A stretch of 61,250 nt of DNA, the filler included, from Dugesia japonica (lineage: Eukaryota), in assembly GCA_001938525.1 (NCBI GenBank). It is 6 parts of 6 records of this genome, joined end to end, with 100 filler letters (N's around TTAATTAATTAA, not from the genome) between each part and the next. Parts side by side here need not be neighbours in the genome. Positions count along the whole stretch, not along the records: positions 8,765 to 20,850 come from MQRL01492412.1; 5 more parts are not named here. One strand, given 5' to 3'. A program made the translations under genes and the position numbers. Positions within the stretch are counted from its first letter, which is position 1, and every line of letters starts with the position of its first letter. The notes beneath the pieces are model-generated. The model was not told the origin of the DNA and made no database searches. It saw only the letters and a list, made by a program, of their open reading frames with translations. Positions 8,765 to 21,489 of this stretch are shown here, piece after piece.

Positions 8765-11071
8765 TTATATTCAAGTTGCATGACAAAACCATTACCAACA
8801 GGGGCATTTTACATTGATGTAAATTTAACATATGAAAGAGCAACTGATGAAATGAATTATCTTTATGAGGTGGATCTTGATTATCCAAAAGAGATTCATG
8901 ATAGAACAAAATATTATCCATTAGCACCAGATAGAATAATTATTACAGAAGACATGTTAGCGAGATATCAAAAGTCTTTTAATAAAAATTTAACAAATAA
9001 AAATGAAAAACCTACAATTAATCAATATGATCATAAAAATTATGTGGTATTAGGATCTAAACTAGATTTATATTTAGATCAACGGATGATATTAAAAAAG
9101 ATTCATACAAAATATAAAATTCCAACATGTACTTGGCTAAAAGATTATATACTTTTTAATATTGAACAAAGAAATATAGCAAGAAGAAATGGAGATGAAT
9201 TTGGAGTTGATTTCTTTAAATAATGAATAATTCATTTTATGGTAAAACACTTGAAAATATTAGGAATAGATGTAATGGGAAAATTGTAGGATCAAATAGA
9301 GAATTTCAGAAATTTGTTAGTAAACCAAGTTATTTAAGCAGTAAAATTTTCACAATAGATGAAGAAAATGTCAGTAATATGGCGGCAATGCATATGAGAA
9401 AAACCAATTTAAATTATAATAAATTTCCATATTTAGGATTTACAATTCTTGAATATGCAAAAGAAGTAATGTATAATTTTGTCTATAATCAATTAGAACC
9501 AACAGTGTGACAAAATAATTATAAAATTCATTACAGCGATAGTGTGACAAAAGACACACCAAAAATTTTAAGAAAAAATAATAAAACTGAGATAAAAAAG
9601 ATTTCATAAATATCAACATGTTATGAAAAAACTTTGATGGTAAAGAATTTTCTTATCCACAGAATTATTAAATATGGACAAAAAGTGGATTGAGTAAATT
9701 AAACAAAGTAATTAAACATTCTACAATTAAAAAGATTTTTAGGGTAAGAACAAAGATGGGAATTGTAGATGGCACACAAGATCATTCACTATTAAATGAA
9801 AATGGTGAACAAATTAAACCAACAGATGTAACCAATGAAACCAAATTACTTCATAATAAAATATTTAAAGAAACAAATAATGAAATAAATATTTATAAAA
9901 TTTTATTTGATATTTATGAAAATGAACCCAATGATTTATTTTCAAAGACAGCTTTTATAGATGGCTTCTTTCTTGGAGATGGGTCAGCGGGAATTTATAA
10001 ATATGAATCAGGGATAAAATATTGTTGTACATTTAATAATCAAGATTTATATTTATTAAATAAAATAAAAAGATTTCATAAAGAAGTTTATAATAAAGAA
10101 ACAATGATATACGATACAATGAAATCATCACACGTTTATAAACTTAATTTACAAAATCCACAAATACATGCAAAGTATTTTTCTAAAAATTATTATAATG
10201 AATTTGAAAAGACAAAACAAATTCCAGAATATGTTTTAAATGCGTCATTTGACACGAGATATTGGTTCTTTGTAGGATTCTATGCAGCAGGTGGTAGTAA
10301 AACTTTCAATGGAAAAAATAGTTATAGAACAATTAGTTTTACACAAAAAGGAAAAGAATGTTTTACACAGTTGTATTATTTAGCAACATCTTTAGGTATT
10401 AATTTAGTTGTTTCAGAAAAAAAAGATAAACCAAACTGTTTCAGTGCTATGCAAACAAAAACTGAAATTTCAACTAATGTGCAGTGTTAGATTTTTAAGA
10501 GAAGAACTAGAAGATGTTTATGATATCAAAACAAGCGATGGATCATTTAACTGTGGATTTTCCATTAATTATAAAAAATACTGATAGTTTATTTGTAGAG
10601 ATAATTGGAAGAGATAATTTAGAAAAATTAAATAGATTAACTGGAAGTGAACTATTTCAGATGAAGGATGAAATACCTAATAACGAAATACTTAAATCTG
10701 ATTTTATAAAACCAAAATTATATGCTTATCAGTGGGTCCTTATGGGTGAAGAAGTAGATAATATTAAATTTCAGAAAAAACATAAAGGTGTACAATCTTT
10801 TAATAAAATTGGAATGGAAGAATTTGATAGTGTTTTAGAAGATTCAACTTCAATAGTTTACGGTACAAATTATTCATTAAAATCTTAATTAAATGAAATT
10901 AAAGTAACCAGTCAAAAGAAAATAGCTTTAACAGGTTACAGTGATAAGAGAATTATAGAAAATAATGGTGCCAGAACATGGCCACATGGAAATAAATATG
11001 AATGCTCAAACTGTGGAGATTGGTATTTAAAATTAGATTTAATAAATAATAATTTAAGATGTAATCAATAA
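8765..11071 (+). pseudogene. Protein-primed DNA polymerase B (C-terminal half) with an intein at motif C
   Basis: YEVDLDYPKEIHD..YYPLAP; FFK*MNNSFYGKTLENIRNR (motif B); YSD|intein|TDSLF (motif C); MKDE, KPKLY, KKHKGV, KKIALTGYSDKR...TWPHG; stops at 9220, 9508 and 10886. Confidence 0.93.
9541..10579 (+). mobile_element. Intein with LAGLIDADG homing endonuclease (PolB motif-C site), pseudogenised
   Basis: Block A SVTKDTP; block B GIVDGTQDHSLL; endonuclease blocks FIDGFFLGDG and FFVGFYAAGG; block H QLYYLATSLGI; block F VYDIKT; block G LIIKN followed by +1 Thr. Removing it restores YSDTDS. Confidence 0.93.
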
Positions 11072-11085
11072 TTTTTTATTAAGAA

Positions 11086-11559
11086 ATGACAACGAATCCA
11101 ACAGAAAAAGAATTAGAAAAAATAATATATTCAAAGAAATGTAAATCAGTAAAGATTGATGGTAAAAATTATTATATCAGTAAAAAAGTAAAAGATGAAC
11201 CTAAGAAACAAAAAAGTAGTGAAGGTGGATTTACTTTTCTGGCGGCCATCCCAGCTATCAGAGGCGCTTTAGCTGGCACAGCGGGAATAGCCTCAGGCAT
11301 AGAAAGTACCGTCACGAATTCAAGACAAGCAATCAAAGCACAAAAAGAAATAGAACAAATTGGCAGTAAAGCCCACAAAGGACATGGTAGTGGTATTTAT
11401 TTAACACCTTATCAAGGTTCTGCAATACATAAATATTTAAAGAATATCATTGATGATCCAAACTTAAAAGAATTAACAAAAAATTTTAAACATGGTGTTG
11501 AACTAGAAATAAAAGGAGATGGATTATATTTAAATCCTTATACTAAAAATAATGTATAG
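11086..11559 (+). CDS. Adenovirus pX-like virion core protein candidate
   Basis: Intact 157 aa; basic segment then EGGFTFLAAIPAIRGALAGTAGIASGI; KGHGSGIYLTPY and IKGDGLYLNPY repeats. Confidence 0.6.
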   Translation: MTTNPTEKELEKIIYSKKCKSVKIDGKNYYISKKVKDEPKKQKSSEGGFTFLAAIPAIRGALAGTAGIASGIESTVTNSRQAIKAQKEIEQIGSKAHKGHGSGIYLTPYQGSAIHKYLKNIIDDPNLKELTKNFKHGVELEIKGDGLYLNPYTKNNV

Positions 11560-11562
11560 AAA

Positions 11563-12462
11563 ATGAATACAAAAGAAGTAGAAAATAGAATTAAAGAATT
11601 GAAAGCATTAATTAAAGGACAAGAAAAATATAATAATTTTTTCAGTGAAAATGTTATTGATTCAAGAAACTTACAAAGTGATTTATCTATATTACAAAAA
11701 CCAAAAATTTCAGCAATAGAAAAAAATAAACCAAAAAATACATTAATTTTAAAAGATGAGGTAACACAGGGGATCTTGAAGTAGAAGATGAAATTAAACC
11801 ACAACTAAAAATAAAAGAAGAGCCTTCTCAAAACAATATTAGAAACATTAAGAAAAGAAGATATACAACCATTAGTTGTTAATTTAACAATTAATAAAGA
11901 TGAATTAACAGATTTAACAACACCAAAAATATATTTGACAAATGTTGCTTTAAAAGGAGAGCGCCCAAAGAAATTCGTTACAGTAAAATTTCCAGAAAAG
12001 GATGAAGAATTATTTTTTTATAAAAAAAGGGGTATGAGTTATTTTACAATGGAAAGAGAAAGTCATGCTTATAATGATATTTTAATGGATATAATTTTAG
12101 GAAATAAAGAAGATATAAGAAATGATGTTATGGCAAAAGAATTTATAGAAAGATATTTAAATAAAATGATAAAGGAAAGTATAAATGATGAATACTGTAA
12201 ATTTTTAAGAGAAAATAAAACATAAACAAAAAGGTAGACCAAAAAGTAAAGGAAAAAAGACCATAAAGGAAGCGTAGCCCACCAAGGAAAAAGCGTTTCA
12301 CCGACTGGTTTATTTGAAGAGTTAACATTATTAATATCAGCAGCAAAATCTGGACATAATAATGTAGATGAAGAAATAAAGAGTGTATGTAAAAAATTAA
12401 AAACTATAGGTTTAATATCTAACATGATTTATGATAAATATAAAACTAAATATTTCAGTTAA
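11563..12462 (+). pseudogene. Conserved Polinton hypothetical protein
   Basis: Frameshifted and stop-containing ORF; C-terminus PTGLFEELTLLISAAKSGHNNVDEEIKSVCKKLKTIGLI resembles a recurrent Polinton C-terminal motif as I recall it. Confidence 0.55.
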
Positions 12463-12518: not shown

Positions 12519-12627
12519 CATTTAACATTTAACATTTAGATGACACATTTAGATTTTACACTTTACATTTTACATTTAACACTTAAGGACTTAACAAAAG
12601 CTTACTGCGTAAGCTAAAGTTTTTTTA

Positions 12628-13314
12628 TAAAAAATTTCACATCAGTTTTTAGTAGTTGGTAAAGAACAAGATTTAAAGTTAGATTTAAAGTTTCCTATAA
12701 AATTAGATTCAGAATATGAACTTGGTTTGATTTGCTTTACATGTTACAATATTATTTTTAACATTAATAATTTAAATAATAAATTTATCAATAATACTAA
12801 AGAAGAAAAGATTGAAGCTGGAGCTTATGAAATAAAAGAAATTTCAAGTAGATTAGAAAAATATGGAATAGAAGTTATAGCTGATCCCTCAACAGCAAAA
12901 TGTAATTTATAAACAAAAAACGTATTAACTTTTGATGATAAATCTTTCTTTCATAAAATCTTAGGTTTCGCTGTAAATCCTTATCCACCAGGAAATTATT
13001 ATTTAGATAATAAAATTGATATTTCAAATATTAACATGATAAATATTACTTGCAATATTGTTAAAGGTAATTAGGTAAAATCTTCAAATTCAGGTGACAC
13101 CCAACAAATAAATTTATTAAATTCATTTCCAATTAATACAGTTCCTTTTGGATTTAAAATTATAGAAAGACCATCAGTAATTATTTATACTAAAATTTAT
13201 ACAAAATACATTGACAGTTTAAAATATAATATTATAGATGAAAACTTTAACACGATAGATTTTAACCAAGAGATGATATCAATTTTTGCACATTTAAGAA
13301 AATATAGACACTAA
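12628..13314 (+). pseudogene. Minor capsid (penton) protein, Polinton A
   Basis: FPIKLDSEYELGLICF...IEAGAYEI...ILGF...INITCNIV...VPFGFKIIERP...IIDENFNTIDFNQEMISIFAHLR; two internal stops. Confidence 0.85.
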
Positions 13315-13336: not shown

Positions 13337-13406
13337 ACTTTTGATGTCAGATGTGAGATGTCACACTTCATTCAACATTTTACATTCGACATTTTATATT
13401 TAGAAA

Positions 13407-13832
13407 ATGACATACAGTTTGATTGATTTCTTAAAGACTTTTAAAATTAACACAACAACAAATTTTTATTTATATTCAATTGCTGACGTTTTAGATTTAC
13501 CCATTGAGATTTATATGAAAAATGAAGTGCCCAAATATTCGGAGAATAGTGGCACCATAACAGGTAACTTAATAATTAATTATCAAAATACAAATCAAAA
13601 AGGAACTTATTGGACAGCCTATACTAATGAATATTATTTTGATTCTTTTGGTTTAAAACCTTTTGAAGAACTTGAGCCATTTGTAAAAGTTTATAAAAAA
13701 ATTCAAGTATAACATTTTGATTTAAAAATTTGTGGTATCTTGTGTATTTATTTTTTATATAAAATTCGTGATGTTGACTTTAATGAAATTATTAGTGAGA
13801 TGAAAAGTTTATATGATAATTTAATTATATAA
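13407..13832 (+). pseudogene. Adenain-like cysteine (maturation) protease
   Basis: LIINYQ...KGTYW (catalytic His changed to Tyr), YYFDSFG, QV*...ICGILCIYFL. Confidence 0.88.
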
Positions 13833-13837
13833 AAAGA

Positions 13838-14980
13838 ATGAATAAGTTTGGTGAAAGTTTATTCGGTGTAAACAATTCACTATTAATTAAACATGTTGAT
13901 GCTAAAATTAGAATATCAAATGCTTAAAATGAAAATAAATATGTAAATGAAACAAGTGACACAATAAAATCTTTAAAAATAACAGATGACCCTAAAGATT
14001 TAACAGATGCAGTTAATTTAAAATTTATTAAACAATTAGAAGAACAGATTGAAAGACATGAATTAATTTTCACAAAATTTTTGAAAATTGATAAATCCAC
14101 AATTAATAAAATTTAGTTGCAATTTAAAGTTGATGAATTAAATAAATTAAAAAATATAGATTTCTCTAAAAAACTCAAAAGTATAAATGAGAAAATTAAA
14201 AATTTAAGTCAAAACTGTAATCGACAAACATTTGACAGAATAAGTTTTGAAATTAAAAGAATAAAACTAGAAATTTTCCCATTAAAAAAAACTGATTTAT
14301 TGTTTAGATTAAAAATATTAAGAGAAGAGGATGTGAATCTTACAATTAAAAAAGCAATTGATGTATTAAATAATAAACTTGATTTTTTACCTGCTGATTT
14401 AGATAAGAAAACTTTTGACCTACATTTATATCTCATTGATGTAATTAGATTAAATATAGATTATTTTCACTTTAGAATTTCTGAAATACTTAAAGAAATT
14501 AAAAGAATAAAATCAAGACTACATAAAACTTTTATTGATAGAATTAATATTTTATTTAAAACTTATAAAGAAACCTTTTTTGAATCATCACTTAAAAGTT
14601 TAGGACATATGATTGATAATTACTTACCTTATATTTTTAGGTTTAGTGATGAAATAATATTTACAATTATCTGTTATGAAAAAAATGATAATCTTCCACA
14701 ATTTTGTATTATAGACAAGTATGTGCATAATTTAGATTTTATAAGAAAGGGTGAAATGAAAATTGTGAAAACTATACAATATTTCTATCTTGAAGATCCT
14801 TTTAGTATTTTTTTACATACAAAGATTATTGCAAAAGTTAGTATAAATATAGAGGGCCATTCTGAAATTAAAATTTTTCATTACACCATATTGCAGTATC
14901 ATTTTTGTATATTATTAATAAAGATAAATCTATTAAAATTTACCGAGAAAGCACTGAAATTAATAGAAATACTAATATAA
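13838..14980 (+). pseudogene. Fiber/spike-like coiled-coil protein candidate
   Basis: MNKFG N-terminus, DDPKDLTDAVNLKFI motif, long helical middle and beta-rich C-terminus; two in-frame stops. Confidence 0.4.
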
Positions 14981-15051: not shown

Positions 15052-15668
15052 ATGGAGGAAAAAAGTATTTATCCTGATTTAGAAATTGAAAGAAGTAGTT
15101 ATACGATTTTAGATTTAAAAAATAAACTGTCAATGTCTAGAATTAGAGATTTTGAAAATGACCTTTAGTTTATAAAAGATAAAATAAAACATTATAAAAA
15201 AATTCATAGAAGATGGGAAAGGATAGATTCAACAATAAAATATACACAAATATTTGTTAGTGCTGGCATTGGAATTGGAGGTGTAATTTTGATTACGTCA
15301 ATTGGCACCGCTATTGCCACTATAGACGTTTCAATTATTACAGGCGCAATTTCTGTATTACCTGTCAGCAGCACATTAAATTTATCATTAATAAAATCAC
15401 GAAAGGAAAGATATGAAAAATTAAATAAGAAACTTGAGGCTGTTAAAAATAAATTATTTCTATTTCAACAGAAAGCTGTAATGATGAAATTTTAACTGAT
15501 GATGAATTAACAATAAGTGAAAATATGGTAAATAAAGTTCATGAAATAATATCGGCAACAAAAAAAGCAAGCGAAGCCAATTATAAAAATAATGATGTTA
15601 CTTTAAAGAAAATGGTAGAAAATCAAACTAAGGCTATTAATGAAATGAAATCAAATTTAGAAATGTAA
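15052..15668 (+). pseudogene. Two-transmembrane Polinton accessory protein
   Basis: SIYPDL N-terminus, KHYKKIHRRW, hydrophobic IFVSAGIGIGGVILITSIGTAIA / VSIITGAISVL, then KAV..DEILTDDE; one stop and one frameshift. Confidence 0.6.
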
Positions 15669-16683: not shown

Positions 16684-16709
16684 AATCGCAAAAGGACCCC
16701 TAAAATAAA

Positions 16710-17452
16710 TCATCTAACATTTCATCAGTTTCCTAATTCAAATAAAAATAATTATATTTAGTTTTCCAGTGAAGATTAACCTCATAATCATATTCCGTTT
16801 TATTAGTAAAAATATTAGAAAACAATTCATGATAAACATTATACCTATCTGTCTTATTTAATTTTAAAAAGATGTAACAATTTGAATTATTCCTTATAGA
16901 ATTTTTATCTAAATGATAATATGTTTGGGAAATATAAATTACATTACAATTTGAATGTCAGCCTCTAGTGAAATAACTTTTTTGTATCTCTTGATTCTTT
17001 TCATTAACTTCATCACCAAGTATTATTAAGTTTTTCTTTTCTTTTGAAAGTCTGTCACATGAAATTATTTCATTAGGTTTATTACTCAATGTTACAATTA
17101 TAGATCTAGGTTTTTTGATAACTAATTTTTTCTCTAGATAATATTGTACAACCTGATATGGTGTAATGCAATTATTTGGTACTATATTTTGATTTTCAAA
17201 CATTAAATTAATTTCTTGTTTAGTTAAACCATTTTGAAAATCAATGTAAAGTAATTGAATTTCAAATTGATTAATTGTTGTTGAATATAAAATTAAAACA
17301 TCATAATCTAAAAATTCAGGTGCCAATAACATTTTCATTAATAAAACATTTTTCCCACAACCTGAAGATCCTATCATTAAAAGTCTAAAATTATTTGGTA
17401 ATATTTTATTATTGATAATTGTTATATTTTTATTCCAGATTAACTGCGTCAT
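16710..17452 (-). pseudogene. A32/FtsK-like DNA packaging ATPase
   Basis: Walker A GSSGCGK, Walker B LIILGD, and FTRG*HSNCNVIYISQ...IRNNSN continuing past the stop at 16958. Confidence 0.9.
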
Positions 17453-17529: not shown

Positions 17530-18510
17530 TTTAGACTTCATAATTAATTTCTTCATCAACAATTTCTTCAATCGCATTAAAATTCATGTGAATTTTGTAA
17601 AATGAAAATTTGCTTCTTAATATCTTTGGGGACGTATCTACTAACTTACTAAATTGTATTAATTTGTTTATGTCTCTTACTGAATAGTAAATTTTTCTTC
17701 CAGCTAAATAATTTTTAAATTGTGAACTTTTTTTAAATTCTAATTTTAATATTAATAATAATTTTCCTAATTTAGAATAACCAATTAAACCAATTTGTTA
17801 ACATTTATTTATTACTTCACCCCAATAATAAATTTCTTCTGTAATTCTTTTTCTATCAAATGATTTATAACGTTCTTCTGAAAACTCATAAATACTTAAA
17901 GTTTTTTGCCCAAGACCTTCTTGTTTTAAAACAGCTGAAGAAAATGGTTTTGATACAAAAGATCTTAAAAACTCTTGTTTAAAATTTAATTTATTATCAC
18001 TTTCTAAAAGAATAAATTCTCTCCTATTTAATTTTCCTCTTTTGATTAGATTTATTTCTGATTTAGTTAATGGTGGTATTTTAGATTCAGAGTTTTCACT
18101 TTCAGATTCAGATTCAAAACTTTCACTTTCAGATACAGAACTTTCACTTTCCGATTCAGATTCTATTTTTTCTATAACTTTGGGTTCTGGTTTTATTTTT
18201 TCAATTTTAGATTTAGATTCAGAACTTTCACTTTCAGATTCTATTTTTTCTATAACTTTTGGTTCTGGTTTTGGTTTTGGTTATTTTTTATTTTAGCTTT
18301 AGTAATTGGCACTTCAATATATTCACCTTCTGAATTTGTTACTAGTTGGGTTCTTTCCTTTTCTTCTTCAAGTTGTTTTCTTTTTATTGTAAATCTATAA
18401 TATCTTACAAAAGATTTTAAAAAATCCATTTTAATAATTTCATAATTTAATTTTTCTAAATTCTCACAACCTTCTAAAATTTTATTTAATTCATTTAAAA
18501 CTGGTTCCAT
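17530..18510 (-). pseudogene. Hypothetical Polinton ORF with a duplicated KPEPKVIEKIESESES linker
   Basis: ATG at 18510, frameshifted; direct repeat ~18136-18195 / ~18219-18272; globular-looking C-terminal part. Confidence 0.45.
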
Positions 18511-18742
18511 TTTATTAGATATTTTAAAATTTATATTTAAATCATAAGCCTTGAAATTTCGGGCCCTGCAGGGTTCACTTTTAGATTTTACGTGTCCTTT
18601 TGGGATTTTACATTTACGGTTCCCTTTGAGATTTTACATAGGACATTTTACATTTTACATTTTGCACTTAACATTTTACGGGTCCCTTTGGGTATTTTGC
18701 ATTTTAATTAAATTGGATTAAAATGCATGCTGTGCAGGCATA

Positions 18743-20056
18743 TTATAATGCCGATTTCTGCAACTCATTACTATAAAATCTTCCCAACATTTTGTTGCCG
18801 TTTAGATTACTAATTTTAAATGTATACATTTTTCCATAATATATTTTTGTAATAATATAAATTCTTTTTGACCATTTAAATTTATACCCTTTAGGAAATG
18901 TTTTTCCAATTTTATTAATCCTTACACGATCTCCTATTTTAAATTTAAGTTTCTCAGGAAAAGTAGTTGGTAAATTTAATTGAATACTTTCTGGATTTTT
19001 TGATGCTTTTTGAGGTGTAACATTAATTGTTGAATGTATTGTGTTATTGTAATCATTTACAATTTGTTCTAATAAATCTAAAGTAACATTTTGATTCCCA
19101 ACGGCAGTAAAATGTTTAAAGAGTTTATTTTTAAATGTTCTATTAAATCTTTCAATGACAAATGCTTTGCCATGATTTTCAGTTGAATACAAATTTATAT
19201 TATTCTCATTACAAAAAGTTTTAAATGTTACATTATAAAATTCTTTTCCTTTATTTACCCATAATTTATTTGGTGTCCTAAAACTTTTTTCTAGAATTCT
19301 TTTAAATGCTTTTGTTGTTAATAGACCGGTTTTATTTGCATAAAGTTCTATAAAAGCAAATCTCGTATAAAGATCATTTAAAGTTAATATTACATTTTTC
19401 CCTTTTCTTTCTGTTCCTTGAAATATCAAATCTGCTGACCAAATATCATCTTTTTCATATACAATTACTTTTCTAAAATGTTTTGGTTTTCTATATTCTT
19501 TATGAAGTTTTTTACTTTTACTTTCACTTGGGTCCATTTTATCATCAGATTCTTCTTCAAAAATAGTACTTTCCTTATAAGGATCCTTTCTTGTCCCACC
19601 TCCACCAAACACTATCTTTGCTTTCATTGCTAATTTGATCAAAGCTCTTTGTAATTTTTTACTTGTTGTTAGATTTTGGATATTATTTAGATCATGTATT
19701 AAATTTGCATCCGCAATATGTCGATCTCTAATATCTTCACTGTAATATGAGATGTCATGTTTTAATGCGGGATTAGCAACTCTATTAATTGGTTCTTTAC
19801 CTAGATTTGGAATATTATTTTTATCAAGTCTAATATCTAATCTTGTCCCAGGCCCAGTGTAATAATGTGTAAATAAATGTCTTTCACCTGGATACTTTTC
19901 CCCAGTAAATGGTTTTAATAATGCTGATGTTAATTTTGAACTTTGTAAGTCGCCGCCTTGATTTACTTTGTTTATGCTCAAATCTAAATGTCTTGATTTA
20001 TGTTTCTTTAAAATTATTTTACCACAATTGTCACATATAACATTTTTAGAGGTCAT
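18743..20056 (-). CDS. Zinc finger + parvovirus-type phospholipase A2 + rve (DDE) integrase fusion
   Basis: Single open 437-aa ORF: CDNCGKIILKKHKSRH; YTGPGT...HDISY...RHIAD (PLA2); IWSADL, LWVNKGKEF (second Asp is Asn), IERFNRT, KFKIGDRVRI, FYSNELQ. Confidence 0.9.
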   Translation of the reverse strand: MTSKNVICDNCGKIILKKHKSRHLDLSINKVNQGGDLQSSKLTSALLKPFTGEKYPGERHLFTHYYTGPGTRLDIRLDKNNIPNLGKEPINRVANPALKHDISYYSEDIRDRHIADANLIHDLNNIQNLTTSKKLQRALIKLAMKAKIVFGGGGTRKDPYKESTIFEEESDDKMDPSESKSKKLHKEYRKPKHFRKVIVYEKDDIWSADLIFQGTERKGKNVILTLNDLYTRFAFIELYANKTGLLTTKAFKRILEKSFRTPNKLWVNKGKEFYNVTFKTFCNENNINLYSTENHGKAFVIERFNRTFKNKLFKHFTAVGNQNVTLDLLEQIVNDYNNTIHSTINVTPQKASKNPESIQLNLPTTFPEKLKFKIGDRVRINKIGKTFPKGYKFKWSKRIYIITKIYYGKMYTFKISNLNGNKMLGRFYSNELQKSAL

Positions 20057-20065
20057 TTTTTATAT

Positions 20066-20585
20066 TTAACATTTACAATTATAATCAGAGTATTCAATTC
20101 CCCTTATATTTTCAATCATAACAATTTTACTATTTGCTAATTTCATTTCAACATGTTTCTCTTCAAGTATACACCAATAAATAGTTCCTTTGAAATCTAG
20201 ATCTTTTGTAATATTAAGTGTAACATCAACATTATTAATATTCATTTTATAATCATGAGCACTTACATCAAAACAAAACATCGGATATAAATTACCGAAA
20301 TCTAAAAGTGATAATTGTGGTTCTGTTAAAAACTCATGGCAACATTTTACATAATTTAAGTAAGGATAAATCATTTCATTATTAACAAATTAAATTTACA
20401 TTCATTAATTGGATAAAAATTATTGTTCAACTGTATCTGTATCTTTTTCACATAATTAGCACCATTTTTCTGCATAAATAAATTATTATTATTTTCATAT
20501 GTAATTTCTGTTTCTTTTAAGCAAATGAAAACATATCTAGGTTGATATGCTGGACTACTAATTTTTATTGAATAATATCCACTTT
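20066..20585 (-). pseudogene. Major capsid protein, C-terminal part (Polinton A)
   Basis: PRYVFICL...KIQIQLNNNFYP...YLNY...LYPMFCFDVS; frameshifted; position within the Polinton. Confidence 0.75.
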
Positions 20586-21489
20586 ACATTTAATTTACAT
20601 TAATTTACATTTAATTTTCTTGTGTTATTTTTAAAACTTGTTAACTTATTAGTTTTTATTTCTATAGTCATTTATTAAAGTAATTGTTTAGATTTCGTTC
20701 TTGTTCTACGTAAAGCATTTAATACTATTTCATTTTTATTTTCATCATGTTCACTTTTTTTATTGCAATTAATTTCGTAACTTTTTCTTCATTAAATTCA
20801 TTTGATTCTTCTAACTTTGTTTTATAAAAATCATTTTCTATTTGTAAATCNNNNNNNNNNNNNNNNNNNNNNNNNNNNNNNNNNNNNNNNNNNNTTAATT
20901 AATTAANNNNNNNNNNNNNNNNNNNNNNNNNNNNNNNNNNNNNNNNNNNNAATCAAATATTTAATTTTATATTTTATTATATTTAAATTATATTTGATTT
21001 TTAAAAAATATATTAAATAAACATTTAAATAAATTTGATTTTGAAGCTCAACAATAAATTTACTAGCCGTATTTTCCGGATGAATAAGCGAACTAGGTAA
21101 AATTATATAGAAATTATTTGATTAAAATATATTGGATTTTTATGATTTAAAAATATATATGATTTAAAAAAATACATTACAATAGAAATTTAATTTTATA
21201 TTTTATTCTTTTTAAAATATATTTGATTAAAAAAAATACATTAAAATAAATATCTTTAATTCATTTCATTTTATATTTTTAAAAAATCCTTTAATTTTAG
21301 TAATTTATTTTATAGTTAATTTTCTTGATATAATTTTAAATATACTTTTGATTTTACTAAATTCCGTTTTTAAAGATAAAAGATTTTAAATCTATTCTTT
21401 TAAAAAACTATCTTATATACTATATATTTACTTTTTTTTATATATTTACTTAATTGTTCTAATTCTATTATGTATAAATCATCATTAAA

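What the first reader, a model, noticed from the sequence alone, without database searches (positions are those of the whole stretch)
9541..10579. Giant-virus-type intein with a LAGLIDADG homing endonuclease inside a Polinton protein-primed PolB
Seen in sequence: catalytic motif C is split as IHYSD|SVTKDTP...GIVDGTQDHSLL...GFFLGDG...GFYAAGG...VYDIKTSDGSFNCG(frameshift)FPLIIKN|TDSLF. All splicing and endonuclease blocks are present, with Ser1, a Lys-Asn end and Thr+1. Established: YGD|TDS is the classic Pol-c intein site of archaeal and mimivirus RNA-primed PolBs, and inteins are essentially unknown from animal nuclear genomes. From memory (not verified by a search), segments such as VIKH..KKIFRV, GIKY...NNQDL..LNK, DTMKSS.VYKL and the KN end closely track the mimivirus PolB intein. 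Inference: an intein crossed between a giant-virus polymerase and a protein-primed Polinton polymerase, probably during co-infection, and was then endogenised. That makes it a selfish element within a virus within a probably metazoan germline. This copy is inactive (stops at 9607, 9669 and 10488, about three frameshifts, and Asp to Gly in the second LAGLIDADG motif).
Basis: partly seen in the sequence, partly recalled or inferred. Interest (0 to 1): 0.93.

Follow-up and report, generated by a model that had tools for sequence, protein, structure and literature searches.

The report
Decayed intein inside a Polinton polymerase
A self-splicing protein insert (an intein with a homing endonuclease), related to inteins in giant-virus DNA polymerases, splits the catalytic motif of the protein-primed polymerase of a decayed Polinton-like element; I found the same arrangement, sometimes intact, in about a dozen other public sequence clusters but in no paper I could search.

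Summary
A 1,039-nt insert (9541-10579) splits motif C of a family-B polymerase as YSD|intein|TDS. It has Ser1, a terminal Asn, Thr+1, the block-B His and two LAGLIDADG motifs.

Its longest stop-free piece matches 995 library proteins (best E 1e-50, 33-47% identity). The nearest are inteins at the same YGD|TDS site of RNA-primed-type PolBs, two of them on 228-258 kb giant-virus-like contigs.

The flanking polymerase is protein-primed (PF03175 family). Its neighbours are a PLA2-rve integrase, an A32-like ATPase and a double-jelly-roll capsid fragment, so the element is Polinton-like.

The copy is dead. The intein has 3 frameshifts and 2 stops, the exteins 1 frameshift and 2 stops, and five other genes are broken or truncated.

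It is not unique. At least 11 clusters of pPolB carry the same intein at the same site. Some are intact (1,504-1,693 aa). One multi-copy family has intein-bearing and precisely intein-less alleles.

Eight pPolB-borne inteins, the window's included, form one clade (100/100 NJ bootstraps). The jump between polymerase families therefore predates this copy.

A metazoan host, and a specific likeness to mimivirus, are not shown.

The parts
8765..11050 (+). 3' part of a protein-primed family-B DNA polymerase gene (pPolB), from motif A onward. The piece edge cuts its 5' end. It is broken: 4 frameshifts and 4 in-frame stops in all, intein included. The 3' bound is approximate.
   Evidence: The two N-extein pieces match 120 of 120 PF03175-family relatives colinearly, best E 5e-31 and 9e-20. 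They show no similarity to RNA-primed PolB exteins. The N-extein alignment ends exactly at 9540 against the uninterrupted Y.DTDS of intein-less relatives. The C-extein is only weakly similar: frameshift-aware score 87-94 against shuffles of 37-43 +-6.
9541..10579 (+). Intein (domain bounds) inserted between the D and the T of polymerase motif C. It has Ser1, the block-B Thr..His, a terminal Lys-Asn and Thr+1. It is broken by 3 frameshifts and 2 stops.
   Evidence: 995 homologues, best E 1e-50. In the homologues the junctions read YGD|SV.GDTP ... (K/H)N|TDS. The predicted fold (pLDDT 86) matches endonuclease-bearing inteins (TliVMA, PI-SceI, PI-PfuI).
9936..10430 (+). LAGLIDADG (two-motif) homing endonuclease domain inside the intein. 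Bounds are approximate. One of its two acidic motif columns is no longer acidic.
   Evidence: Pfam LAGLIDADG_3 at E 1e-7, above the cut-off, and Hom_end at E 8e-4. Fold matches to I-DmoI at TM about 0.7 on the target. Column shares.
11086..11559 (+). Intact 157-aa ORF, conserved in related elements, where it lies beside the packaging ATPase. Function unknown.
   Evidence: tblastn to L003 and L004. Frameshift-aware alignment shows 0 breaks and 43% identity.
11857..12456 (+). Homologue of a 213-aa protein of related element L004. Broken (2 frameshifts, 1 stop).
12961..13302 (+). Homologue of a 108-aa protein of related element L003. Broken (1 stop).
15058..15650 (+). Homologue of the 176-aa (L003) and 209-aa (L004) proteins of related elements. 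Broken (1 frameshift, up to 1 stop).
16703..17452 (-). A32/FtsK-like packaging ATPase. Broken (1-2 stops, no frameshift).
   Evidence: Weak Pfam Pox_A32 hit. 46-50% identity to the ATPases of L003 and L004, E 1e-61.
18743..20056 (-). Intact 437-aa integrase: an rve core with an N-terminal parvovirus-type PLA2-like domain.
   Evidence: Pfam rve at E 2e-6 (28.2 bits, below the 32.6-bit cut-off) and Phospholip_A2_4 at E 4e-6 (above its cut-off). 917 relatives, nearly all of those listed with both domains, best 53% identity.
20114..20574 (-). C-terminal third (about 150 aa) of a double-jelly-roll major capsid protein, with 1 frameshift. The N-terminal part is not found in the piece.
   Evidence: 41-45% identity to the PF21738-bearing capsid proteins of L003 and L004. 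An intergenic-type repeat array follows at 20583-20617.

Best explanation
The piece is a decayed copy of a Polinton-like element. It carries a protein-primed PolB, a PLA2-rve integrase, an A32-like ATPase and a double-jelly-roll capsid protein. Its polymerase gene carries a pol-c-type intein.

How an intact copy would work (inferred from established intein chemistry):
- The polymerase is translated as a precursor.
- The intein's Ser1, its block-B Thr/His, its terminal Asn and the Thr+1 of the C-extein carry out protein splicing.
- Splicing joins ...YSD to TDS... and so restores catalytic motif C.
- The LAGLIDADG endonuclease cuts intein-less polymerase alleles at the DNA that encodes motif C. 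Repair then copies the intein in (homing).

Origin:
- The intein belongs to the large family of inteins at the same site of RNA-primed-type PolBs of giant viruses.
- The window's copy sits in a sub-lineage that lives in protein-primed PolBs, so the jump between the two polymerase families predates this copy.
- The motif-C codons shared by both families (TAY-NNN-GAY | ACN-GAY-WSN) are the likely reason the site could be reused. This is inference.

State of this copy: neither splicing nor homing can work, and most of the element's other genes are broken too. This points to an old, probably integrated, fossil. The host is unknown.
For: Shown:
- Junctions and splicing residues are in place.
- Pfam LAGLIDADG_3 is above its cut-off. 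There are 995 homologues, best E 1e-50.
- 28 of the top 30 homologues are DNA_pol_B (PF00136) proteins; 20 also hit Intein_splicing and none hits PF03175. Their junctions read YGD|S...(K/H)N|TDS.
- Two carrier contigs, of 228 and 258 kb, have a MutS gene near PolB (one contig), Rpb7 (both), ankyrin, XPG and DUF5770.
- The fold matches solved inteins, and the top BFVD matches are Pandoravirus, phycodnavirus and Marseillevirus DNA polymerases.
- The extein matches 120 of 120 pPolB relatives and none of the RNA-primed exteins. The relatives' family is PF03175.
- Related elements L003 and L004 share the integrase, ATPase, capsid protein and pPolB.
- The same intein at the same site of pPolB occurs in L006, L007, L008 and L009 and in at least 11 protein clusters. 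These include intact proteins carrying PF03175 plus PF14890.
- In the P0409 cluster, alleles 98-99% identical in the N-extein differ by the exact presence or absence of the 346-aa intein.
- Eight pPolB-borne inteins form one clade in 100 of 100 NJ bootstraps, and the window is sister to P0412.
- Decay: 9 in-path stops of all three types and 8 frameshifts over 8 genes. 3 of the 8 frameshifts lie near a homopolymer, against a 27% background.
Against: - The window's own pieces do not reach Pfam's Intein_splicing or DNA_pol_B_2 models. Both assignments rest on homologues.
- The C-extein is recognisable only with a frameshift-aware alignment tested against shuffles.
- The trees are neighbour-joining on 155-266 columns. 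They are unrooted, so the direction of transfer is not shown.
- One pPolB-borne intein (P0418) falls outside the clade.
- The giant-virus nature of the carrier contigs is inferred from gene content and from named BFVD matches, not from a capsid gene or a taxonomy label.
- There is no host flank, so integration is inferred from decay alone.
Confidence: 0.85

Rival explanations
1. One reading: a recent, direct jump of the mimivirus-type intein from a giant-virus PolB into this Polinton during co-infection, followed by endogenisation in a metazoan germline.
For: The insertion site is the same and the homology to giant-virus PolB inteins is clear. Intein-less members of the wider pPolB family are annotated in a snail, a sea slug, an anemone and snakes.
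Against: The window's nearest intein relatives are other pPolB-borne inteins, at only 42-48% identity, in a clade with 100/100 support. No named mimivirus hit came back. No host DNA lies in the piece. All intein-bearing pPolBs found are in unnamed records: metagenome assemblies or unidentified contigs. The 24% GC matches L008 (25%) and the giant-virus-like contigs (21-32%).
Confidence: 0.07
2. The contig is a free, functional Polinton-like virus genome, and the breaks are sequencing or assembly errors or a variant genetic code.
For: The DNA is very AT-rich and holds many homopolymers. The closest relative, L008, is a compact contig with an intact intein-bearing pPolB and full-length called genes around it.
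Against: There are nine in-path stops of all three types (2 TAA, 3 TGA, 4 TAG), whereas the intact ORFs end in TAA and TAG. Only 3 of 8 frameshifts lie near a homopolymer of 5 or more, against 27% of random positions. The capsid gene lacks its N-terminal two thirds.
Confidence: 0.05
3. The insert is not an intein but a captured or free-standing endonuclease domain, like the HNH and VSR domains described in nematode and mollusc pPolB2.
For: Endonuclease insertions in Polinton pPolB are documented (PMC10748475, PMC11071308). The relatives here also carry an Endonuclease_7 domain elsewhere in the protein.
Against: Ser1, the block-B His, the terminal Asn and Thr+1 are all present, and the split of motif C is exact. 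Homologues hit Intein_splicing. The fold matches Hint plus LAGLIDADG inteins. Intein-less alleles show an uninterrupted motif C.
Confidence: 0.02
4. An assembly chimera that joins a giant-virus PolB fragment to a Polinton.
For: Both kinds of virus can occur in one sample and are similarly AT-rich.
Against: Only the intein is giant-virus-like. Both flanks are pPolB, and the joins fall exactly within one codon-defined motif. The same architecture recurs in independent assemblies.
Confidence: 0.01

Closest known systems
Pol-c allele inteins of RNA-primed family-B polymerases (mimivirus PolB intein, Ogata 2005, PMC549080; other Nucleocytoviricota and archaeal PolB inteins)
   Same: The insertion point is the same, between the D and the T of motif C (Y.D|TDS). 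Both have Ser1, a terminal Asn, Thr+1, a LAGLIDADG endonuclease and a length near 350 aa. Sequence homology is clear: 33-47% identity, E to 1e-50.
   Different: The host protein is a protein-primed PolB (PF03175 family) with no detectable extein similarity to the RNA-primed hosts. The window's intein lies in a separate pPolB-borne clade. Its penultimate residue is Lys, as in many of the giant-virus-like relatives; others, and some pPolB-borne ones, have His.
Endonuclease domains in Polinton pPolB (HNH and VSR in nematode, oomycete and mollusc pPolB2, Jeong 2023, PMC10748475; read as traces of intein invasions by Krupovic 2024, PMC11071308)
   Same: A nuclease of homing type is embedded in a Polinton polymerase.
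   Different: Those are bare nuclease domains at other positions and have no splicing domain. Here there is a complete Hint splicing domain with a LAGLIDADG nuclease, set exactly in the catalytic motif. Intein-less alleles exist in a close family.
Inteins in endogenised giant-virus DNA polymerases and nuclear genes of protists (Gallot-Lavallee 2023, PMC10710043)
   Same: Inteins occur in virus-derived polymerase genes that sit in eukaryotic-size contigs. Viruses are proposed as the vectors. Transfers between paralogous sites are documented.
   Different: Those polymerases are of the giant-virus RNA-primed type. Polintons and protein-primed PolB are not mentioned in that paper.

Membership tests
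Intein (Hint splicing domain with homing endonuclease) | Insertion within a conserved motif of a host protein, with host sequence continuing on both sides | tested here: met
   Motif C is split as YSD|...|TDS. The N-extein alignment to intein-less relatives ends at the junction. The C-extein similarity is weak but above shuffles.
Intein (Hint splicing domain with homing endonuclease) | Splicing residues: Ser/Cys1, block-B Thr..His, terminal Asn, and a Ser/Thr/Cys at +1 | tested here: met
   All are present in the window. The His column is 100% His in 126 relatives.
Intein (Hint splicing domain with homing endonuclease) | Recognition by a Hint or intein-splicing profile, or by fold | tested here: inconclusive
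   The window's pieces give no PF14890 hit. However, 20 of the top 30 homologues do, and the predicted fold of the 266-aa piece matches solved inteins at E about 5e-8. That piece lacks both ends of the splicing domain.
Intein (Hint splicing domain with homing endonuclease) | LAGLIDADG endonuclease with two motifs | tested here: met
   PF14528 scores 32.5 bits against a cut-off of 22.5. Fold matches to I-DmoI. One acidic column is lost.
Intein (Hint splicing domain with homing endonuclease) | Protein splicing and homing activity | not testable with these tools
   This copy is broken: 3 frameshifts and 2 stops. Indirect sign of mobility in relatives: intein-bearing and intein-less alleles at 98-99% N-extein identity.
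Pol-c allele of PolB inteins (giant-virus / archaeal type) | Insertion between the D and the T of the Y.DTDS motif, and closest similarity to inteins at that site | tested here: met
   In two giant-virus-like PolBs a second, weaker homologous intein copy sits at another position.
Pol-c allele of PolB inteins (giant-virus / archaeal type) | Host is an RNA-primed family-B polymerase (PF00136) | tested here: not met
   The exteins match PF03175-family pPolB and not PF00136 proteins.
Pol-c allele of PolB inteins (giant-virus / archaeal type) | Specific closeness to the mimivirus PolB intein | tested here: inconclusive
   No search returned mimivirus by name. The BFVD top matches were Pandoravirus, an unknown phycodnavirus (31% identity) and Marseillevirus polymerases. 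The protein I had in mind is the mimivirus PolB intein of PMC549080.
Polinton / Maverick (polinton-like virus, Preplasmiviricota) | Protein-primed family-B polymerase | tested here: met
   Met through relatives: 120 of 120 matches, many of them PF03175. There is no direct Pfam hit for the window's pieces.
Polinton / Maverick (polinton-like virus, Preplasmiviricota) | Retrovirus-type (rve) integrase | tested here: met
   An intact 437-aa ORF. Pfam rve at E 2e-6, 28.2 bits, below the 32.6 cut-off. 917 relatives annotated with rve.
Polinton / Maverick (polinton-like virus, Preplasmiviricota) | Double-jelly-roll capsid protein and A32/FtsK-like packaging ATPase | tested here: met
   A capsid fragment and a broken ATPase, both homologous to those of L003 and L004.
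Polinton / Maverick (polinton-like virus, Preplasmiviricota) | Adenain-like cysteine protease | tested here: inconclusive
   The 101-aa ORF at 13407-13712 looks protease-like to my eye, but it gave no Pfam hit and only short matches to L003 and L006.
Polinton / Maverick (polinton-like virus, Preplasmiviricota) | Terminal inverted repeats and a target-site duplication in host DNA | not testable with these tools
   Both ends of the piece fall inside element genes. No long inverted repeat was found.

The most novel reading that the evidence does not exclude
Pol-c inteins move between the RNA-primed polymerases of giant viruses and the protein-primed polymerases of Polinton-like viruses that replicate in the same cells. 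They would do so through the motif-C codons the two families share. They are still mobile inside Polinton populations, as shown by intein-bearing and intein-less alleles at 98-99% identity, with the flank next to the site diverged. If so, the endonuclease could act as a weapon or an addiction module in the conflict between giant viruses and their parasites, and the intein tree would record which viruses meet in one host.
Probability: 0.3. Interest if true: 0.8.

Novelty: new variant of a known kind. Interest (0 to 1): 0.6.

Why it matters
Inteins at the pol-c site are a textbook case of site-faithful selfish elements. So far they are described in RNA-primed polymerases of archaea and giant viruses. 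Finding the same intein lineage at the equivalent motif of a protein-primed polymerase matters in three ways.

- Host range of the allele. An intein allele can cross between polymerase families that share little beyond their catalytic motifs.
- Evidence of exchange. The result is a sequence-level trace of genetic exchange between giant viruses and Polinton-like elements.
- Support for an inference. It gives direct support to the published inference that endonuclease inserts in Polinton polymerases descend from intein invasions.

The window's own copy is a fossil. The intact and polymorphic relatives found on the way are the material on which the question can be studied by description alone.

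Tried and rejected
Searches that found nothing:
- Pfam on the extein pieces and on nine smaller ORFs gave no significant hit.
- PDB sequence searches with the intein piece, the first extein piece and the L004 polymerase gave nothing.
- An exact look-up of the integrase found nothing on record, so the source genome is not in that collection.
- The search for related loci with the intein piece in viral contigs found no relative.
- A degenerate DNA pattern for the junction found no match in viral or metagenome contigs.

Literature:
- Eight searches and several full-text look-ups found no report of a Hint intein in a Polinton or polinton-like pPolB.
- Kapitonov & Jurka 2006 and Krupovic & Koonin 2015 are not held. 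I could not rule out a mention there. I have a vague, unverified memory that the former may note an intein in a protist Polinton.
- The WGS prefix of L007 is not in any held paper.

Readings rejected:
- A variant genetic code, because all three stop types occur in path.
- Homopolymer sequencing error as the main cause of the frameshifts.
- An RNA-primed extein.

Correction: my first NJ run had invalid distances. It was redone with a safe cap and gave the same sister pair.
Full report
**1. The observation**

The piece has about 24% GC throughout. On the + strand a family-B polymerase starts at the piece edge inside motif A. It shows a motif B of the NSFYGK kind and reaches motif C, which is split.

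- The first intein codon is at 9541 and the last intein base at 10579. The flanks read ...HYSD and TDSLF....
- The longest stop-free piece of the insert (266 aa) passes Pfam's cut-off for LAGLIDADG_3 and nearly reaches that of Hom_end.
- Scored against 1.84 billion representatives, it finds 995 proteins at E<=1e-3. The best has E 1e-50, with 33-47% identity over about 250 residues.
- Aligned to intact relatives with frameshifts allowed, the whole insert lines up from junction to junction: about 350 residues at 43-46% identity, with 3 frameshifts and 2 stops.

**2. What the insert is**

- Of the top 30 relatives, 28 carry DNA_pol_B (PF00136), 22 carry its exonuclease domain, 21 carry LAGLIDADG_3 and 20 carry Intein_splicing. 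None carries the protein-primed model PF03175.
- In nearly all of the top 45 the insert sits as YGD|SV.GDTP ... (K/H)N|TDS. This is the pol-c site with Ser1 and Thr+1.
- Two carriers lie on contigs of 258 and 228 kb. The first has MutS near PolB, with DUF5770, ankyrin, XPG and a kinase; both have Rpb7. This gene content is typical of giant viruses.
- An AlphaFold model of the 266-aa piece (pLDDT 86, pTM 0.80) matches endonuclease-bearing inteins (TliVMA, PI-SceI, PI-PfuI, PhoVMA, a Thermococcus Pol intein) and I-DmoI in the PDB.
- Among predicted viral structures, the top five matches include DNA polymerases of Pandoravirus, an unknown phycodnavirus (31% identity) and Marseillevirus. Mimivirus was not returned by name.
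- The features Ogata et al. give for the mimivirus intein are shared: 351 aa, Ser1, terminal Asn, Thr+1, the YGD/TDS pol-c allele and a LAGLIDADG domain (PMC549080).

**3. What the host gene and the element are**

The N-extein pieces show no similarity to the RNA-primed exteins that carry the related inteins (best E 0.2-0.4 in a set of 164).

They do align, in order, with the polymerases of two metagenomic elements, L003 and L004. I reached these through the integrase.

The L004 polymerase (779 aa) has thousands of relatives. Many are annotated PF03175, and some are named from a snail, a sea slug, an anemone and snakes. These are Polinton pPolBs.

- The window's N-extein pieces match 120 of 120 of them (best E 5e-31 and 9e-20). 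None of the 120 has the intein, and none of the 164 intein carriers has a pPolB extein.
- Intein-less relatives have an uninterrupted Y.DTDS, and the window's N-extein alignment stops exactly at 9540.
- The C-extein is poorly conserved. Plain searches are not significant. A frameshift-aware alignment scores 87-94 against 37-43 +-6 for shuffled queries, and 0 of 60 shuffles reach it.

Around the polymerase lie:
- an intact integrase with a PLA2-like domain (above its Pfam cut-off) and an rve core (E 2e-6, below its cut-off), with 917 relatives;
- a broken A32-like ATPase;
- the C-terminal third of a double-jelly-roll capsid protein;
- several small conserved genes.

This is a Polinton-like element. 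Its ends are not in the piece.

**4. State of the copy**

| Gene or region | Frameshifts | Stops | Note |
|---|---|---|---|
| Intein | 3 | 2 | |
| N-extein | 1 | 1 | |
| C-extein | 0 | 1 | |
| ATPase | 0 | 1-2 | |
| Capsid gene | 1 | 0 | N-terminal two thirds missing |
| Three small genes | several | several | all broken |
| Integrase | 0 | 0 | intact |
| 157-aa ORF | 0 | 0 | intact |

In one set of frameshift-aware alignments, one per gene, the in-path stops are of all three types (2 TAA, 3 TGA, 4 TAG). A variant code therefore does not explain them.

Only 3 of 8 frameshifts lie next to a homopolymer of five or more, against 27% of all positions. Sequencing error is therefore not the main cause.

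The element is a fossil. That fits an integrated copy, but the piece shows no host DNA.

**5. The arrangement is not unique**

The same intein at the same site of pPolB turned up in several independent records.

- L006. A 190-aa fragment (P0031), 46-47% identical to the window's intein, lies on a 239-kb metagenomic contig. It sits just after homologues of the window's N-extein, with junctions HYMD|SVTKDTP and NN|TDS. Integrase remnants and a capsid gene lie nearby. This copy is also fragmented.
- L007. A pattern scan found this 4.2-kb contig. It holds a pPolB with an Endonuclease_7 domain and a 340-codon intein whose two junctions share one frame. It has a single in-frame stop.
- Further clusters. 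Searching with the junction-spanning part of the L007 ORF returned at least 11 clusters of intein-bearing pPolB. They include:
  - P0409: 1,537 aa, PF03175 + Intein_splicing + Hom_end, 136 members;
  - P0412: 1,693 aa, PF03175 + LAGLIDADG_3 + Intein_splicing;
  - P0414: 121 members, with YSD and KN as in the window;
  - P0416 and P0418.
- Their contexts are Polinton-like: rve integrase, A32 ATPase, capsid protein (L008, L009). L008 has 25% GC, like the window.
- Presence/absence alleles. In the P0409 cluster, proteins of 1,537 aa and of about 1,191 aa are 98-99% identical over the first 1,042 residues. They differ by the exact presence or absence of the 346-aa intein. The empty site is an uninterrupted motif C. 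The residues next to the site and the C-extein are more diverged, at 90-91% identity.

**6. Relationships**

- In neighbour-joining trees the window's intein is sister to P0031 (90% of 200 bootstraps).
- With the new sequences added it is sister to P0412. Eight pPolB-borne inteins form one clade in 100 of 100 bootstraps. P0418 falls outside.
- The DNA on both sides of the site encodes the same Y-x-D | T-D-S in both polymerase families. In the 15 nt downstream, the window matches a giant-virus-like PolB at 13 of 15 positions.
- Inference: the shared catalytic motif offered a usable target. The intein entered pPolBs long before this copy arose. The larger diversity in RNA-primed hosts suggests that direction of transfer, but an unrooted tree cannot show it.

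**7. Comparison and novelty**

Known already:
- pol-c inteins of archaeal and giant-virus PolBs (PMC549080);
- HNH and VSR nuclease domains in Polinton pPolB2 (PMC10748475), read as traces of intein invasion (PMC11071308);
- inteins in endogenised giant-virus polymerases (PMC10710043);
- PLA2 lipases in Polintons (PMC4642659).

I found no report of a complete Hint/LAGLIDADG intein in a Polinton or polinton-like pPolB. Two key papers were not held.

I rate it a new variant of a known kind. The window's copy is one decayed member of a lineage that is well represented in public data.

**8. Verdict**

- Observation: confirmed.
- Interpretation: partly supported. The intein, its giant-virus kinship, the pPolB host and its inactivity hold. 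The recent direct jump, the mimivirus-specific likeness and the metazoan germline are not shown.

Noticed in passing
window 13320, 17511, 18560 (+); 12506, 18618, 18680 (+) and 15677 (-); arrays at 12519-12586, 13369-13400, 18579-18679, 20583-20617: The spaces between genes hold two short GC-rich motifs: a palindrome of the form CGGGCCCTNCAGGG and a GGTCCCTTTGGG-like word. They sit beside arrays of a 7-nt unit (CATTTAA / ATTTTAC). None of these occurs in the nine related loci fetched. They may be promoter or terminator signals of this element. Unexplained.
   Followed up: partly
window 18743-20056 (-): The integrase carries a parvovirus-type phospholipase A2-like domain fused in front of the rve core. 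The same two-domain architecture is seen in nearly all of the relatives listed (917 found in all), almost all from metagenomes.
   Followed up: partly
P0409 cluster; L009:13124-14161: A multi-copy Polinton-like family on contigs of 95 kb to 1 Mb has both intein-bearing (1,537 aa) and precisely intein-less (about 1,191 aa) polymerase alleles. They are 98-99% identical upstream of the site but only 90-91% downstream. This pattern is expected from recent homing or from target-site escape.
   Followed up: partly
P0001, P0004; L001:10001-15481, L002:10001-17029: Giant-virus-like PolB genes of 1,800-2,400 aa hold two or three inteins each. At least two in each gene are homologous to the window's intein.
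   Followed up: no
L005:8134-12675: An RNA-primed PolB with a related intein is split into many short called genes on a 26-kb, 21% GC contig. This is either a decayed copy or an error-rich long-read assembly.
   Followed up: no
window 18083-18163 and 18100-18276: A 21-27-nt tandem repeat lies between the ATPase and the integrase. On the + strand it reads as a serine/aspartate-rich low-complexity ORF. No homologue was sought.
   Followed up: no
window 14117-14980 (+): The second-longest intact ORF of the piece (287 aa) has no Pfam hit and no match in the related loci.
   Followed up: partly
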